From assembly GCA_033442325.1 (NCBI GenBank), contig JAWQFM010000002.1, positions 275,954-339,953 on the forward strand: a stretch of DNA of 64,000 nucleotides. Direction: 5' to 3'. A model generated the notes under the pieces. It was not told where the DNA came from, did no database searches, and saw nothing but the letters and a program-made list of their open reading frames with translations. Below, in pieces: positions 8,726 through 47,342 of this stretch (position 1 is the stretch's first letter; each line of letters starts with the position of its first letter). The translations under genes and the position numbers were made by a program. Source of the stretch: Salpingoeca rosetta (taxonomy: Eukaryota > Protista > Choanoflagellata).

Positions 8726-9834
8726 AATGTGCATGTGTCCAATGTGCGTGCACGTATGTTGGCTGAACTTGGGGTTGGCATATTTGACCAGCCTTGGACG
8801 TGTGCATGCAAGGCTGATGCTGCCTTTGCTGGTGCACTCGGACATATGCCTGATGCGCGTGTGTGCGTGTGTGTATTCGTGTCTTTTGAATAGCTGAGCG
8901 AGCATTTGATGATGAAAAGAATATAAGAGTATCGAGTGAACAAGGCTGTGCATGAACCTGTCAACAATGCCCGTGCTGCTGCACTCGGGAGGGGGGGGGG
9001 GAGATTGTTTAAGGGTGTGGTTGGTGGAGCGTGTGTTTGAGTAAATGGGGCGCCTGGCTGTAACGGTTGGCCCCTGAGGGTAAGAACTACAAGGAGATGG
9101 GAATGCGGAAGGGGGGGGGCAAATAGGCGGAGACTGCTTTGAATATCTGTCGTGAACACGGACGGTGGAAACAAACGGATGGGCATCATCCATGTGTTGA
9201 CTTTGATGGTGCTGCTGTGTGGCATGTGTGGTTGGATGGTGTCTTTGTTGTGGCTGCGTTGGTCGTGTGTACTTATCAAAGGGACAGCAGCTAGAAAACA
9301 TGGGTAAAACAAAGCAAACGAGCTAGCCATCTTAGCATCTTGGTCCAGACAGACCAGGCACGAGAAGAGAGTGCAGGACAGGTCACAGACGCGGACAAGA
9401 AGAAAAAAAGGTGGGACAAGGAACAAGAACAGGAAACAGGAAAGACGAGTGGCGCGCCCGTGCAGAGCAACAACGCAGAGCACGGCGACAGGCCAGGGCC
9501 TACGTGCAGTCAAGCACTCTGCCCAATGCCCAAGAAACATAGACAAGGAGGAGTGCTCCACAATTGCATGCACACACACACACTGGCAAAACAGAACAAA
9601 ACAAACAAGCACGCATCAGCGCCCTCGCACAGTACCAGAGTGCCCGTGTTCGATGCCCATACACATGAATCACATGTAAAGAAACTGTCGACTCCCAAAC
9701 CAACAGCATCACACCAAGAGCAACACAGAGTCGTGTGCTTAGACAAAAGGGCACGCTTTTTCCTTGCGCGCAAGCATACTGTGCTTGTGGGCAAACAAAG
9801 GTTGCCCAAGGGCCTCGTGCCGGTCACGAAGGAG

Positions 9835-42628: not shown

Positions 42629-43035
42629 TGCTTTGTCGCTGTCTCGCAACCACCGTTCTCGTTGTTGTTGTCCGCAACGTCCAAAGAAGATTTTTCGCCA
42701 TGTGCGCGCTTGCTGCTTTTGATTCCTTCCTTCCTTCAGTGTGACATCTTGACTGACATGACACACACACACACACTCACAGCAGCGCAACAGCACAACA
42801 CGTACTCACGTAGGCACATGGCATGCCAGCAAGAGCAAGCAACCCACCAGCTCTCTCCCTCCCTGCTCATGATCACATGCACGCACGTACATGCATCTCT
42901 CTTCTTCTCAAAGAAGTTCTGTACACACAAACAAGCAAACACACCAAACAGCCAAACGAGGGGCGCCATTCCACACGACAGGGTTGCTTCTTTCTTTCTT
43001 GCATTCATAGATGCTTCTCTATGCTTGTCATTCAT

Positions 43036-44899
43036 TTAGAGGCAGGGGTGGGAGAGGTACTGGGTCGGGGTGTCGGCACAGGTTGCGTTGCCTTGAACAA
43101 GATAGATGGAGTTGTCTGCGCAGTTGCACAGGGTGAAGCTGGTGAGGTTCCCGCTCGAGACGGCGTCTGGTCGCCGCAGCTGGCGCAGGTTCAGGAACAT
43201 CCCGTCACCCCCGGCGTTGAAGCTCGACTCCAGGAAAGGAATGGCGGTGACAATGTCGTTTGTGTTGACAAACGTCAGGTTGTTCCCTGGCCCGCGCGCT
43301 CGCACGTGCACGTGCCCGTGGGTGCTGCTCAGCGTGGTGTCGAGGAACGATGTTGCAGTCAAGCTGCGGTCCGATGTCACCACCAGTGGCTCCCCTGCGT
43401 TTGCTTCAATTCGCGTCGCTTCCACCTGCATGCAAGGCACAATGGTTCGGGGGAGGGGCAGCAAAGCGGAAAGATGAGGAGGAACCAAGGAGCACAGTGA
43501 GAGAAACTTTACGAGTACTCTCTCTGCCACGTGCATGCATGCAATAGCTGGTTTGAAATGCGGCCATCGCACTCACGCCAGCGATGCCAAAAGAGAGAGG
43601 GGGGGGAGCCTCACACACACACACACACACACAAACACACACCCGCATACACACGCACACACACACATTCACGCGCGCCTCCACTCTCCACCCTTCCCAA
43701 ACGACCTTTGCCTTTGTTCCTCTTGTCTGTTTGAGTGCACACAAACCTGTGGGCGAGCGGTGATGTTGTTTTCGATGACGAGGGCCTCGGACGAGAACTG
43801 TGTTTGTTCCGCATCACCAACAAAGTGCGCCGTCGATGAGTCCTGTTGCGCAGCGAATCGACCGGGGCAGAGTCGTAGTTGAGTTGGTGTGCACATGATG
43901 GATGAGTCATTGAGCGGCAGAGAATGGCTTGAGCAAGGGTCTCAAAGAGCAGAGCGCCACAAAATGGTGCTTGGCTTGTACTCTTGTACTCACTGGCAGT
44001 CCAACTCAACGGGCTGACCTCGGGGGTGACGCGAAGGCGCGGAGAGCTCAGGTGAACGTCTGCGCCGCCAACATCAAGGGTTGACTGGGATGACTGCGAT
44101 TGGCTCAGCGCCCGAAACCGAACCTACCCATCGTGCGTGAGAAAGGAAGGAGGTGAGTAAGTCAGGGAGACAGAAAGGACGGAAGACGGAGGGAGAGACA
44201 GGGAGACAAGAAGAAGGCATGCTCGTGCCAGCAACGCGTACACAGTACACACAGGCACACACTGTACACACGCACACGCATGCATACTCACACGCACACG
44301 CGTACATACTCACACCCGCACACGCGTACATACTCACACACGCACATATACACCCGCACCTGATCAGATCTGAAGATTGTTGGATTCTCCGGTGCACCGC
44401 GAACAATGTAGACTTCTGCCTCACCCCGCACAAACACTTCGTCTGCACCAAACTCGTGCAGGAAGCCCACGGTGTCGCCATCAATGACCATGGCGTGCAT
44501 GCCGCGCGAGTCGATGTTGAGCTGGTTGATGATCCAGATGCTGCCGATCAGTGCGGTGATGGACAGCAGCCCACACAGCACCACGAGGCCAACGACGCAC
44601 CACAGGCGCCGCCGCCGAAGACCAACGGGATAGGTCTCCACAAGAGGGTCGTCCTGGCCCTGCACGTTGAACCCAGAATACCTGCACGTGGTTGTTGTCG
44701 TTGTTTGAGTGAACAAGTCTGTGAGTTGTTGCGCGTGCATTTTGTGCATGCGCGCTGTAGTGCTTGCAAGCACGGGCATGGAAAAGCTGAGCAAGAAGAG
44801 CATAGCGATGCGCAAGCAGGCGAGCAGGCAAGCGGGCAAGCAGGCAATCAGGCAAGCACGCATACAACTTTGCACACACGCACGCACGCACGCACACAC

Positions 44900-44967
<68 letters not shown>

Positions 44968-45138
44968 TCATACGCACCATGACTTGCTGCCTGGAATGTA
45001 TTTGCTTGATCCTCTTCGAATGCGGCCGGAGGTGCCATAGAGCGCATCGTCATCTTCTCTGCGTGGAACCACTTTCCGCTCTGGTGGCGCGTTCTTGGTG
45101 TGCACCGCACCTCTCTCAAGGTACCGTCGCTCCGACAT
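43036..45138 (-). CDS. SGCB: Beta-sarcoglycan-like type II membrane protein (357 aa); exons 45138-44978, 44681-44360, 44123-44019, 43842-43747, 43425-43036
   Basis: GLRRRR followed by a single TM, then LNIDSRGMHAM; ATRIEANAGEPL; C-terminal Cys cluster FTLCNCADNSIYLVQ...C...PCL (recalled SGCB: GLRGRK, TERITSNATSDL, YKLCMCADGTLFKVQ...NPC). All four introns are GT-AG and in phase. Confidence 0.82.
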
Positions 45139-45604
45139 CCTTTTTTTTGGGGGGGGGGGAACAGATGCGGTTGGCAGAACGTGCCATGTGCAAAGTGGGT
45201 GATTATGCTTATGAGAACGAGAACGCGGGCGTTGGTGGTTGAGCATCATCAGCCATACACCAACCAACAGCACACAGGTGCAAAGCACACGTTCTCATCC
45301 ACAGCACATCACACCATACCACATTATCACAGGCCCACACATACCTGTTCCAGCCTGCTGTGCTGCTTTCAGTTCGCGCAAGCCTTGTTGATATGGATGG
45401 GGTGGATGGGATGGTGCTCGCTTCTCTCGCCTGCTTCTGCCCTGCCTGCTTGCTTGTGTTGCTTCTTGCTTGCTTCTTGTTGCTTGCTTTGTTTCCGTTG
45501 CAAAACATGCAAACCGCACCTCTTCCTCGTCAGTTTTTCCTTTTCCCCCCTATTTTTTCCGTTGCTTGCACGCAAGCACCAAAGACGAAGCGCACAAACA
45601 AAGC

Positions 45605-45634
45605 AGTCGCTGTCGAGTCGCTGTCGAGTCGCTG
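45605..45634. repeat. 11-bp tandem repeat (AGTCGCTGTCG)x2.7 in the sarcoglycan intergenic region
   Basis: agtcgctgtcg agtcgctgtcg agtcgctg read directly. Confidence 0.85.
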
Positions 45635-45713
45635 CCACTCTCAAGCTCACCTCACACACACACCCACCCTCGCTCACATCACGCACACACACAGACACAG
45701 ACAGACAGACACA

Positions 45714-45758
<45 letters not shown>

Positions 45759-45805
45759 AGACACACAGACGGATCAGCGCATCAACAAACGAGCTCACGA
45801 GCACG

Positions 45806-46789
45806 ATGGCAAAGGATTCGTATGTGGTGAACCCTTCGCCGCCACAATCGCCAAGGCGGCGGAATGTCACGCAACGCAGCAACGGCAACAACACCCAGTC
45901 AAACAGGTTCAACACCAGCACCAGCCGAGCTTCAAACCTGTCCACGTCGTCGCCAACCTCACAGGATGACCTGGACCACCACATGGTGAATGTGCTGACA
46001 ACGCGCGTTGGCATCTACGGCTGGCGCAAGTACTGCCTGTACCTGAGCGTCCTCTTGCTCGTCTGCCTCAGCATCATCAACCTGGGCATGCTGGTGTTCA
46101 TCTTCCGTGTCATGGACCTGAACGAGGACAGCGCGGGCCCGCTGCACTTCCAGGACCAGCGCCTGCTTGTGCGCGGCCGCGCCGAGTTCACCAACGGCAT
46201 TCTTGCGTCAAACATCTCCGGCTTCGACAACTCCACCCTGCTTGTGGAGAGCAACCAGCAGATCATCCTGCGCTCCTTTGAGCCTGTGGGCAACGACCGC
46301 AGCGAGCTGGTCATGGACGGCGTTGCCGTGGACGTGGGCGCGCGTACATTTGACCTGAGCTTCATGGGTGACACCTACTTCTCCACCAGCCAGGCCGAGA
46401 CGCGCATCACGTCCAACGACGTGGTCGTCCACACAGACACGGGCATGCGCGTGCGCGGGGTGGTGCAAACCTCGACCATCGCCAACTCGTACGAGGACGC
46501 CGAGGGCCTGACCCTGCGCAGCGTTGGGCAGGAGCTCCTGCTCACCGCCACGGAGAACGTGACCCTGGAAAGCACCACCAACAACGTCAACATCAATGCC
46601 TTCCAAGGCGTGCACCTGGAAGCAGAGCAAGGCGACATTGTGCTCAGCGCAGACAACCTGGAGTTGCAGAACCTGCCCACAGCTGCGGGCCCCAGCAACG
46701 CTTTTGCGCTTTGCCTCTGCACGAGTGGCCGTCTCTTCCGGGTGGACTCCTCCATCACCTGCGAGGACGGCGCAGCGACCCTCTGCTAA
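45806..46789 (+). CDS. Gamma/delta/zeta-sarcoglycan-like type II membrane protein (327 aa), intronless CDS
   Basis: VGIYGWRKYCLY...IINLGMLVFIFRVMDL...GPLHF...LLVRGRAEF matches the delta/gamma/zeta signature (GIYGWRKRCLY, LEGDSEF). C-terminus LCLCTSGRLF...TC...LC; several N-x-S/T sequons. Confidence 0.93.
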   Translation: MAKDSYVVNPSPPQSPRRRNVTQRSNGNNTQSNRFNTSTSRASNLSTSSPTSQDDLDHHMVNVLTTRVGIYGWRKYCLYLSVLLLVCLSIINLGMLVFIFRVMDLNEDSAGPLHFQDQRLLVRGRAEFTNGILASNISGFDNSTLLVESNQQIILRSFEPVGNDRSELVMDGVAVDVGARTFDLSFMGDTYFSTSQAETRITSNDVVVHTDTGMRVRGVVQTSTIANSYEDAEGLTLRSVGQELLLTATENVTLESTTNNVNINAFQGVHLEAEQGDIVLSADNLELQNLPTAAGPSNAFALCLCTSGRLFRVDSSITCEDGAATLC

Positions 46790-47342
46790 TCCCCTTTCCC
46801 TCCCTTACACTCTCTTGATAATAGACCTACGTTCTACCATGTTCCAGCGTCTTTGCGTGCATGTTGTGCTTCGAGATGCGAGCTGATGATGCACGAGGGT
46901 GAAGGAGGGTGAAGGAGCAAAAAGGGTGGTGTTCAGTGTGTGTGCGCGTGTGCTGTGCCTGTGTGCGTGCGCGTGTGTGTCTGTGTACATGATTGTGTGC
47001 TGTGCCTGCATGTGCACTGCAAGTCGGCATGTATGCTGGTATGTCTGTCTTTCTTCGTTTGCAACGAATGGGTGGGAGTAGTGGAGTGTGTGCGCGTGTG
47101 TACAGAAGCTGAGAGGAGGAAGGTGAGGAGAAGGGACGGCTGGAGAGGGTGGGTGCCTTGAGTCCTTGAGTGAGTTTGCGTCGGTGTTCATGTTGTGGTT
47201 GCGCGTGGGTGCGCTGTCTCGCTGTGCTACTGGCCAATGTCAGAACGTAAACCCTTAAACCATCATAGCCTTGCGCGAAAAACGGCGCAATCTCAACAAC
47301 AACAACAGCGACGCAACAACACAGCAACAGCAAGAGAGAAAG

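What the first reader, a model, noticed from the sequence alone, without database searches (positions are those of the whole stretch)
43036..46789. Head-to-head pair of beta- and gamma/delta/zeta-type sarcoglycans: a candidate pre-metazoan sarcoglycan complex
Seen: two different sarcoglycan-family genes face away from each other with 667 bp between their ATGs (45138 and 45806). Both keep type II topology, a beta-rich ectodomain, N-glycosylation sequons and the C-terminal LCxC...C...C cluster. Established: in animals beta and delta form the assembly core of the sarcoglycan complex within the dystrophin-glycoprotein complex, and the human genes are unlinked. Inference: in an apparently unicellular holozoan, both partners are co-regulated from one bidirectional promoter. 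They could form a minimal hetero-oligomer for membrane-cortex mechanics, the collar, or colony ECM attachment. The inverted layout could preserve the duplication that split the two classes. I cannot confirm whether the homologs themselves were reported before; the linkage is the point to test. Head-to-head pairs are common in this window, so orientation alone is weak evidence.
Basis: partly seen in the sequence, partly recalled or inferred. Interest (0 to 1): 0.88.

Follow-up and report, generated by a model that had tools for sequence, protein, structure and literature searches.

The report
Conserved divergent sarcoglycan gene pair, choanoflagellate
The choanoflagellate Salpingoeca rosetta keeps its only two sarcoglycan-family genes back to back on a shared promoter, an arrangement also found in three other choanoflagellate-type genomes, so a two-part sarcoglycan assembly probably existed in animals' closest relatives; whether one partner is a true beta-sarcoglycan is not settled.

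Summary
The window is Salpingoeca rosetta. It holds two Sarcoglycan_1 genes head to head, and they are the only two in the 55-Mb genome.

- **Plus gene:** 45806-46789, one exon, 327 aa. It is clearly gamma/delta type (141-152 bits to solved gamma/delta chains, 25 bits to beta).
- **Minus gene:** PTSG_10962, five coding exons plus a 5' leader exon, all junctions confirmed by RNA contigs. It is a full-length but divergent family member. Its scores to beta, gamma and delta chains are about equal and change order with the profile used, so "beta-type" is not shown.
- **Expression:** both genes are transcribed. Their 5' ends run into one CA/GACA microsatellite of about 130 bp. Contig depths are nearly equal in two studies.
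- **Linkage:** the divergent pair is also found in Monosiga brevicollis and in two further choanoflagellate-like contigs. No neighbouring gene is shared with this window.
- **Complex model:** two delta-type chains plus one second-type chain scored 0.74, best control 0.00. A like complex is solved, so this shows likeness, and it cannot separate hetero- from homotrimers.
- **Partners:** no Pfam hit to dystroglycan, dystrophin, alpha-sarcoglycan or sarcospan.

Both proteins are already in public databases. The conserved linkage appears unreported. The decisive four-clade tree could not be run. Interest is moderate.

The parts
45806..46789 (+). Gamma/delta-type sarcoglycan gene: single coding exon, 327 aa (P0001). 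Type II membrane protein with the GIYGWRK juxtamembrane motif, a transmembrane Asn (N92) and a C-terminal four-cysteine cluster.
   Evidence: ORF. Pfam Sarcoglycan_1 163 bits. Solved gamma/delta chains 84-92 bits for the single protein and 128-152 bits for the clade profile, against 25 bits for beta. N92 is invariant in 7 orthologues. Unspliced RNA contigs cover 45776 to beyond 47200.
44978..45138 (-). Second sarcoglycan gene (PTSG_10962), first coding exon with the conserved start codon (MSERRY...); cytoplasmic N-terminus.
   Evidence: Splice junctions 45138/45344 and 44976/44679 in RNA contigs. Orthologues from M. roanoka, S. infusionum and H. gracilis begin at this methionine.
44360..44681 (-). 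Second gene, coding exon 2: juxtamembrane PVGLRRRR motif, transmembrane helix and start of the ectodomain.
   Evidence: Pfam Sarcoglycan_1 54.9 bits, profile 2-84. Junctions. The motif is conserved in 9 sequences.
44019..44123 (-). Second gene, coding exon 3 (ectodomain). It uses the donor GAG|GTCAGC, not the stronger-looking GTGAGT 25 nt downstream.
   Evidence: Junction 43841/44018 in RNA contigs and in 2 raw reads. Matches the public protein.
43747..43842 (-). Second gene, coding exon 4 (ectodomain).
   Evidence: Junctions; model.
43036..43425 (-). Second gene, last coding exon: end of the ectodomain and the C-x-C...C...C cluster, with the stop codon.
   Evidence: Pfam Sarcoglycan_1 30.9 bits, profile 178-258. 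Junction 43423/43745.
45344..45648 (-). 5' leader exon of the second gene, followed by a 205-nt intron (45139-45343). It carries an in-frame upstream ATG at 45508, which the public model uses to give a non-conserved 55-aa extension.
   Evidence: RNA contigs X10 and X4 and 6 raw reads show the joint 45138/45344. Upstream ATGs listed.
45649..45775 (.). Shared divergent promoter region, mostly a CA/GACA microsatellite. Transcript contigs of both genes run into it from either side.
   Evidence: Minus-gene contig reaches 45648 with 65 more letters; plus-gene contig reaches 45776 with 62 more letters. Stranded raw reads of opposite sense meet in bins 45418-45719. Sequence.
42788..43035 (-). 3' untranslated region of the second gene.
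   Evidence: RNA contig X4 record 3 extends to 42788 and beyond into a repeat.

Best explanation
The locus holds the only two sarcoglycan-family (Sarcoglycan_1) genes of Salpingoeca rosetta. One is a well-conserved gamma/delta-type subunit. The other is a faster-evolving second subunit. They are transcribed in opposite directions from one very short shared promoter region. This divergent pair has been kept in several choanoflagellates while the surrounding genes changed. Shown here: family membership, gene structures, expression, the shared 5' region, and conservation of the pairing. Inferred: the shared promoter keeps the two subunits in step, and the two type II membrane glycoproteins co-fold into a three-chain transmembrane bundle plus extracellular triple beta-helix like the animal beta-gamma-delta core, for example two delta-type chains and one second-type chain. 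I found none of the animal partner proteins in this genome, so the tower would work without dystroglycan, dystrophin, alpha-sarcoglycan or sarcospan, probably as a surface or matrix-facing structural element. It remains open whether the second subunit is the orthologue of animal beta-sarcoglycan or a choanoflagellate-stem duplicate.
For: Family and gene models. These are the only two family genes in the genome. Gamma/delta identity of the plus gene. The two clades are homologous over their full length (hhalign probability 99.4%, E 3e-21, 257 columns). Expression, splice junctions, abutting 5' ends and near-equal contig depth (20.3 vs 26.2 in a 2011 study; 685 vs 763 in a 2024 study). The same head-to-head pair occurs in M. 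brevicollis scaffold CH991545.1 (about 740 bp between starts), in a JGI metagenome contig (about 0.95 kb) and in two Logan contigs of one relative (about 1.2 kb). None of the other genes on those contigs has a homologue in the 64-kb window. Both paralogues occur in at least five craspedid species. Three-chain model: ipSAE 0.74 (runs 0.72-0.75), best of 3 controls 0.00, about 1300 contacts, partner pLDDT at least 73, runs agreeing in at least 92% of contacts. That mark was reached by 51 of 78 solved complexes and 2 of 108 mismatched pairs. The chains fold poorly alone (AF2 mean pLDDT 41 and 48, a different method with shallow alignments). The animal core is a co-folded beta-delta-gamma triple beta-helix with a three-helix transmembrane grip (PMC12871233).
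Against: The complex prediction may draw on the solved animal complex (8YT8, 9C3C). By the tool's own calibration it does not tell which family member binds, and homotrimers were not tested because only one job was allowed. Contig depth is a poor measure of expression, and only two studies plus two low-depth raw runs were seen. Exact transcription start sites are hidden by the microsatellite. Short divergent intergenic regions are common in this compact genome, so the pairing could persist passively. The transmembrane Asn that mediates helix contacts in all three animal subunits is kept in the delta-type clade but is absent from the S. rosetta second subunit. The absence of partner proteins rests on exon-by-exon six-frame Pfam searches of low sensitivity. 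Earlier notes of this scan claim a dystroglycan-like gene and an alpha/epsilon-sarcoglycan-like gene elsewhere in this genome.
Confidence: 0.6

Rival explanations
1. One reading: the second gene is the true orthologue of animal beta-sarcoglycan. The beta versus gamma/delta/zeta split would then predate the choanoflagellate-animal divergence, and the inverted pair would preserve the original duplication.
For: Only one ancient duplication is needed, and animals also have one beta class and one gamma/delta class. The juxtamembrane motif of the second clade (P-V-G-L-R-R/K-R/K-R) aligns with beta's T-G-L-R-G-R-K rather than with the G-I-Y-G-W-R-K of gamma/delta. One of three profiles ranks beta first in both solved sets (47 vs 43 and 38 vs 31 bits). 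UniRef's automatic name is 'Beta-sarcoglycan'. The second clade lies outside the choanoflagellate delta-type clade, which has 96/95 support.
Against: The other two profiles rank gamma first or level with beta. The single proteins do not match beta significantly. The second-clade profile scores choanoflagellate delta-type proteins (22-62 bits) at least as high as beta. A tree of three clades without beta sequences cannot place the root. The shared motif amounts to two residues.
Confidence: 0.45
2. Choanoflagellate-stem duplication: an inverted tandem copy of a gamma/delta-like gene arose after the split from animals and then diverged quickly into a lineage-specific partner. Animal beta arose independently.
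For: The second clade evolves about twice as fast as the delta-type clade between the same species (branch sums 0.99 vs 0.53 and 2.47 vs 1.25). It has no consistent preference for beta. An exhaustive phmmer search of 1.84 billion representatives found only 13 relatives; the five I could trace are choanoflagellate proteins, the rest metagenome or run-assembly fragments, and none is a known animal protein. The adjacent inverted layout is what a local duplication leaves.
Against: It needs two independent origins of a divergent partner subunit. It also needs an early rate burst beyond the present twofold difference to explain a stem of about 2.7 substitutions per site. The G-L-R motif is shared with beta.
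Confidence: 0.4
3. The two proteins do not work together. Each forms its own homotrimer or acts alone, and the linkage is a passive relic that survives because a sub-kilobase intergenic region is rarely broken.
For: Homotrimers were not tested. The prediction tool passes close cousins of a true partner (10 of 12 in its calibration). No shared 8-mer was found among the four intergenic regions.
Against: Only this adjacency survives between the S. rosetta window and the three other loci. The two transcripts have near-equal depth in two studies. Where I could look, species with one gene also have the other. The animal homologues are obligate hetero-oligomers.
Confidence: 0.2

Closest known systems
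Animal gamma/delta/zeta-sarcoglycans (SGCG, SGCD, SGCZ; solved chains 9c3c_g, 9c3c_d, 8yt8_G, 8yt8_D)
   Same: The plus gene shares the G-I-Y-G-W-R-K juxtamembrane motif, the transmembrane Asn, type II topology, ectodomain length and the C-x-C...C...C end. It aligns end to end at 84-92 bits for the single protein and 128-152 bits for the clade profile.
   Different: Its cytoplasmic N-terminus is longer and Ser/Asn-rich (about 70 aa). The gene has no introns. It comes from an organism with no muscle, and I found no canonical dystroglycan or dystrophin in its genome.
Animal beta-sarcoglycan (SGCB; solved chains 9c3c_b, 8yt8_B)
   Same: The minus gene has the same family fold by Pfam (116.7 bits), a G-L-R-basic juxtamembrane motif, a long cytoplasmic N-terminus and a four-cysteine end. 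It is the divergent partner of a gamma/delta-type subunit.
   Different: It has no consistent score preference for beta over gamma or delta. The S. rosetta copy has no transmembrane Asn. The spacing between its last two cysteines is longer (11 residues). Orthology is not shown.
Beta-gamma-delta sarcoglycan core of the dystrophin-glycoprotein complex (PDB 8YT8, 9C3C)
   Same: The predicted three-chain assembly has contacts along the transmembrane helices and the whole ectodomain (about 1300 contacts). This matches the described three-helix grip plus co-folded triple beta-helix.
   Different: There are two gene products instead of three, so one must be used twice or the stoichiometry differs. 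No alpha-sarcoglycan, sarcospan, dystroglycan or dystrophin was detected by Pfam.
Trimeric beta-helix spikes of phage tails and type VI secretion (VgrG C-terminal DUF2345)
   Same: The delta-type ectodomain gives sub-threshold DUF2345 matches in S. rosetta (28.6 bits) and M. brevicollis (26.4 bits), against a cut-off of 30.7. The ESM Atlas structural neighbours of the second protein include phage tail-tip proteins.
   Different: The scores are below Pfam's cut-off and the Atlas TM-scores are 0.25-0.36 on a poor model. This is a likeness of repeat architecture, not evidence of common descent.

Membership tests
Sarcoglycan_1 (beta/gamma/delta/zeta sarcoglycans, Pfam PF04790) | Full-length match to the family profile above the curated cut-off of 32.5 bits | tested here: met
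   Plus gene 163.3 bits, profile 1-256 of 259. Minus gene 116.7 bits, profile 2-258 of 259. Orthologues 67-183 bits.
Sarcoglycan_1 (beta/gamma/delta/zeta sarcoglycans, Pfam PF04790) | Type II single-pass topology: cytoplasmic N-terminus, basic residues before one transmembrane helix, no signal peptide | tested here: met
   W-R-K and R-R-R-R lie directly before the single hydrophobic helix. AF2 helices span 70-109 and 74-112. No dedicated topology predictor was run.
Sarcoglycan_1 (beta/gamma/delta/zeta sarcoglycans, Pfam PF04790) | C-terminal cluster of four cysteines (C-x-C ... C ... C), plus N-glycosylation sequons in the ectodomain | tested here: met
   Plus gene: C303, C305, C319, C327 and 3 ectodomain sequons. 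Minus gene: C328, C330, C344, C356 and 4 sequons. The cysteines are invariant in both clades.
Sarcoglycan_1 (beta/gamma/delta/zeta sarcoglycans, Pfam PF04790) | [quoted passage not shown] | tested here: inconclusive
   Present and invariant in the delta-type clade (N92). Absent from the S. rosetta, M. roanoka and S. infusionum second-type proteins, and present near that place only in H. gracilis.
Sarcoglycan_1 (beta/gamma/delta/zeta sarcoglycans, Pfam PF04790) | Co-folding of three chains into an extracellular triple beta-helix | tested here: inconclusive
   The predicted 2+1 assembly scored ipSAE 0.74 against 0.00 for the best control. This is a prediction only, a like complex is solved, and homotrimers were not compared.
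Gamma/delta/zeta-sarcoglycan subclass | Closer to solved gamma/delta chains than to beta, with the G-I-Y-G-W-R-K motif | tested here: met
   Plus-gene clade profile: 128-152 bits to gamma/delta and 25 bits to beta. The motif is invariant.
Beta-sarcoglycan subclass | Groups with animal beta-sarcoglycans rather than with gamma/delta/zeta | tested here: inconclusive
   Three profiles give gamma 38 / beta 29 / delta 28, beta 47 / gamma 43 / delta 30, and gamma 53 / beta 47 / delta 41 bits. Only the G-L-R-basic motif favours beta. A four-clade tree could not be built because no animal beta sequence could be obtained.
Dystrophin-glycoprotein complex | Partner proteins in the same genome: dystroglycan, dystrophin, alpha/epsilon-sarcoglycan, sarcospan | tested here: not met
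   No six-frame match for PF05454, PF18424, PF09068, PF09069, PF05510, PF20989 or PF04103. Sensitivity is low because matching is exon by exon. Earlier scan notes s1-436010 and s1-436518 claim divergent homologues, which I could not check.

The most novel reading that the evidence does not exclude
The sarcoglycan triple beta-helix tower is older than animals and older than the dystrophin-glycoprotein complex. In choanoflagellates it would be built from two subunits encoded by an ancient divergent gene pair. That pair would be the fossil of the inverted duplication that created the beta and gamma/delta/zeta classes, kept together by selection for balanced expression from one promoter. Animals later unlinked the genes and recruited the tower to dystroglycan.
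Probability: 0.3. Interest if true: 0.72.

Novelty: new member of a known kind. Interest (0 to 1): 0.52.

Why it matters
Sarcoglycans are known as muscle-disease proteins of the dystrophin-glycoprotein complex. Adams and Brancaccio 2015 (PMC4582122) describe sarcoglycan as restricted to cnidarians and bilaterians, but their search used only alpha-sarcoglycan as the query. A 2023 review places some sarcoglycan classes in sponges (PMC10293626). This locus shows that the beta/gamma/delta family is present, expressed and paired in the sister group of animals, in a genome where I found no canonical dystroglycan or dystrophin. That separates the origin of the sarcoglycan tower from the origin of the complex. 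It also offers a genetically tractable organism with only two subunits in which to ask what the tower does by itself. The conserved shared promoter is a simple, testable case of stoichiometric control of an obligate hetero-oligomer.

Tried and rejected
- **Protein database searches.** The three word-index searches returned only choanoflagellate and metagenome relatives. The one exhaustive search, made with the second protein, returned 13 hits and no known animal protein. No animal SGCB, SGCD, SGCG or SGCZ sequence therefore entered the session.
- **Three-clade tree.** It cannot be rooted, so it does not date the duplication.
- **Profile scores against solved chains.** They change order with the profile used, so I reject them as a classifier for the second gene.
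- **AF2 monomer models.** Both were too poor (mean pLDDT 41 and 48), so no fold search was run on them.
- **ESM Atlas.** It confirmed the family only, with a mix of beta-like and zeta-like neighbours.
- **Metagenome scan with the delta-type profile.** It gave 30 loci. Most are first-exon matches in intron-rich, probably animal, contigs, and none held a second family gene. L004 (1.4 kb upstream) and L011 (2.4 kb upstream) show no partner, which may reflect short flanks or divergence.
- **Shared promoter motif.** No 8-mer is common to the four intergenic regions.
- **Gene identifiers in papers.** The identifiers PTSG_10961 to PTSG_10963 occur in no searchable paper.
- **Alternative splice donor.** The perfect GTGAGT donor beginning at 43993 was considered for exon 3 and rejected. 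It breaks the frame, and the RNA uses the GTCAGC donor that begins at 44018.
Full report
**What is there.**
The window lies at C2:275954-339953 of a 55.4-Mb, 68-contig genome. The public protein matching the minus-strand gene is PTSG_10962 of Salpingoeca rosetta, so the organism is a choanoflagellate, not an animal.

On the plus strand, one uninterrupted frame runs from the ATG at 45806 to the stop at 46787-46789 and encodes 327 aa. Pfam Sarcoglycan_1 matches it at 163.3 bits over profile positions 1-256 of 259.

On the minus strand, a spliced gene starts at the ATG at 45138 and ends at the stop at 43036-43038. I read five coding exons from the sequence: 45138-44978, 44681-44360, 44123-44019, 43842-43747 and 43425-43036. 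The product is identical to residues 56-412 of the public model. The whole protein matches Sarcoglycan_1 at 116.7 bits over profile 2-258.

A six-frame search of the entire genome with PF04790 finds these two genes and nothing else.

**Transcripts.**
Contigs of two RNA-type runs from different studies (2011 and 2024), and raw reads of two 2026 RNA-seq runs, were laid on 42700-47200. Every coding junction of my model is present in the contigs.
- This includes the weak-looking exon 3 donor at 44018/44019.
- A sixth junction, 45138/45344, shows a 205-nt intron in the 5' leader.
- The upstream leader exon reaches at least 45648.

That leader holds an in-frame ATG at 45508, which the public model uses to add 55 residues. 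The orthologues of Microstomoeca roanoka, Salpingoeca infusionum and Hartaetosiga gracilis all start at the methionine that corresponds to 45138. The extension is therefore probably leader, not conserved protein.

The plus-gene transcript is unspliced from at most 45776 to about 47235. The minus contig carries 65 further letters beyond 45648 and the plus contig 62 letters before 45776. Both therefore end inside the CA/GACA microsatellite at about 45660-45775. Stranded raw reads of opposite sense meet in the same bins.

The two 5' ends are thus at most about 130 bp apart and may overlap. This is a genuine divergent promoter, though exact starts are hidden by the repeat. Contig depths are 20.3 vs 26.2 and 685 vs 763. 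That fits balanced expression but is a weak measure.

**What the two proteins are.**
The plus gene is plainly of the gamma/delta kind.
- Alone, it hits the solved rabbit and mouse gamma and delta chains at 84-92 bits and beta at 25 bits.
- A profile of seven choanoflagellate orthologues gives 128-152 bits against 25 bits.
- It keeps the G-I-Y-G-W-R-K motif and the transmembrane Asn (N92, invariant). That Asn makes helix contacts in the solved complex (PMC12871233).

The minus gene is a full-length family member but divergent.
- Alone, it matches no solved sarcoglycan chain significantly.
- An exhaustive phmmer search of 1.84 billion representatives finds only 13 relatives.
- Those I could trace are from M. 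roanoka, S. infusionum, H. gracilis and Monosiga brevicollis, and a run-assembly fragment comes from the same run as the Barroeca monosierra delta-type gene. The rest are metagenome or run-assembly fragments without a named organism.

Three successively richer profiles of this clade score the solved chains as follows:

| Profile | Gamma | Beta | Delta |
|---|---|---|---|
| A3 (4 sequences) | 38 | 29 | 28 |
| A2 (7 sequences) | 43 | 47 | 30 |
| A4 (18 rows) | 53 | 47 | 41 |

The order is not stable. The A3 profile also scores choanoflagellate delta-type proteins at 22-62 bits.

The one beta-like trait is the conserved juxtamembrane P-V-G-L-R-basic-basic-basic motif. HMMER aligns it to beta's T-G-L-R-G-R-K. 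UniRef's automatic name, 'Beta-sarcoglycan', is a lead and not a test.

In a maximum-likelihood tree of 20 sequences, the second clade is monophyletic (100/100) on a long branch. It is not nested in the delta-type clade (96/95) and evolves about twice as fast. A recent duplication is excluded. Without beta sequences the tree cannot say whether the duplication predates animals. I could not bring animal sequences into the session, so that test is left as the first next step.

**Linkage.**
This is the strongest new result.
- In M. brevicollis (scaffold CH991545.1, locus L040), a single-exon delta-type gene (8940 to 7963, minus strand, 326 aa, 182.6 bits) faces a second-type gene. That gene's exons begin near 9674 on the plus strand, about 740 bp between starts.
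- A 12-kb JGI metagenome contig (L041) has the same layout with about 0.95 kb between starts.
- Two Logan contigs from one more distant relative (L005 and L006; delta-type 40% identical to S. rosetta) have it with about 1.2 kb.
- None of the other open frames on those three loci has a homologue anywhere in the 64-kb S. rosetta window. The pair has stayed together while its neighbourhood turned over.
- No 8-mer is shared by the four intergenic regions, so no common regulatory element can be named.

**Do they bind?**
A three-chain job used two copies of the delta-type protein (residues 62-327) and one of the second protein (residues 66-357 of the conserved form).
- It scored ipSAE 0.74 (runs 0.72, 0.74, 0.75) against 0.00 for the best of three controls.
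- There were about 1300 contacts along the transmembrane helices and the whole ectodomain.
- Partner pLDDT was at least 73, and the runs agreed in at least 92% of contacts.
- The tool's mark was reached by 51 of 78 solved complexes and 2 of 108 mismatched pairs.

The tool warns that a like complex has been solved, so the pass may be from memory, and that a pass does not tell which family member binds. Each chain alone gives a poor AF2 model (mean pLDDT 41 and 48). That fits obligate co-folding, but the method and alignments differ. I therefore treat hetero-assembly as likely by analogy and not as shown.

**Partners.**
Six-frame Pfam searches of the genome found nothing for dystroglycan (PF05454, PF18424), dystrophin EF-hands (PF09068, PF09069), alpha/epsilon-sarcoglycan (PF05510, PF20989) or sarcospan-type CD20 (PF04103). 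This agrees with Adams and Brancaccio 2015 for dystroglycan and dystrophin. The searches match exon by exon and are insensitive. Earlier notes of this scan report a dystroglycan-like gene and an alpha/epsilon-sarcoglycan-like gene on other pieces of this genome. I could not locate or test those, so they stay as leads.

**Comparison with what is known.**
- Only three searchable papers hold both 'sarcoglycan' and 'choanoflagellate'.
- Suga et al. 2013 list sarcoglycan among complex components in a figure I could not read.
- A 2023 review places some classes in sponges.
- Both S. rosetta proteins are in public databases with Pfam assignments.

Presence of the family in choanoflagellates is therefore database knowledge. 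The conserved divergent pairing and the shared promoter appear not to have been described.

**Verdict.**
- Right: the family, the non-animal host, the gamma/delta identity of one gene, the shared promoter and the conserved linkage.
- Unproven: the beta identity of the other gene, the age of the duplication and the physical complex.

I file this as a new member of a known kind, with moderate interest.

Noticed in passing
window 45139-45648 (minus strand): The public model PTSG_10962 (412 aa) starts at an upstream ATG at 45508 in a 5' leader exon and reads through a 205-nt intron junction. The 55-aa extension is absent from three orthologues, which start at the methionine matching 45138. The leader also holds a one-codon upstream frame (ATG TGA) at 45679 if transcription starts that far up.
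   Followed up: partly
window 45660-45775; also 43592-43678, 44868-44973 and 42700-42787: Long CA and GACA microsatellites sit in the shared promoter, in two introns and in the 3' region of the second gene. The one in the promoter stops transcript assembly from both sides and hides the start sites.
   Followed up: no
L040:9674-11530 (Monosiga brevicollis CH991545.1): The public M. brevicollis model MONBRDRAFT_23397 (P0019, 236 aa) looks mis-built. It lacks an upstream exon that matches profile positions 27-54, and its C-terminal third does not align with the family, although open frames further on match profile positions 225-346.
   Followed up: partly
window 46505-46672 (P0001 residues 235-288); L040:7963-8940: The delta-type ectodomains give sub-threshold matches to DUF2345, the C-terminal beta-helix of bacterial VgrG spikes (28.6 and 26.4 bits, cut-off 30.7). 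The Atlas structural neighbours of the second protein include phage tail-tip proteins. This points to a shared trimeric beta-helix repeat architecture.
   Followed up: no
L011:2463-3329, L012:309-1193, L015:1075-2178: Intron-free gamma/delta-like sarcoglycan genes lie on low-GC (37-39%) metagenome contigs. They form their own clade outside the choanoflagellate delta-type clade, with no second family gene within 2.4 kb upstream in L011. The source organisms are unknown.
   Followed up: partly
L040:12060-12299 and L041:7503-7736: A small gene just downstream of the second-type sarcoglycan gene is 83% identical over 42 residues between M. brevicollis and the metagenome contig. It has no counterpart in the S. 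rosetta window.
   Followed up: no
L007 (TARA ocean metagenome scaffold) and P0002 (Logan contig): Marine metagenome and run assemblies hold close relatives of both S. rosetta genes (72% identity for the second type, 69% for the delta type). An S. rosetta-like choanoflagellate carrying both genes is therefore present in ocean samples.
   Followed up: no
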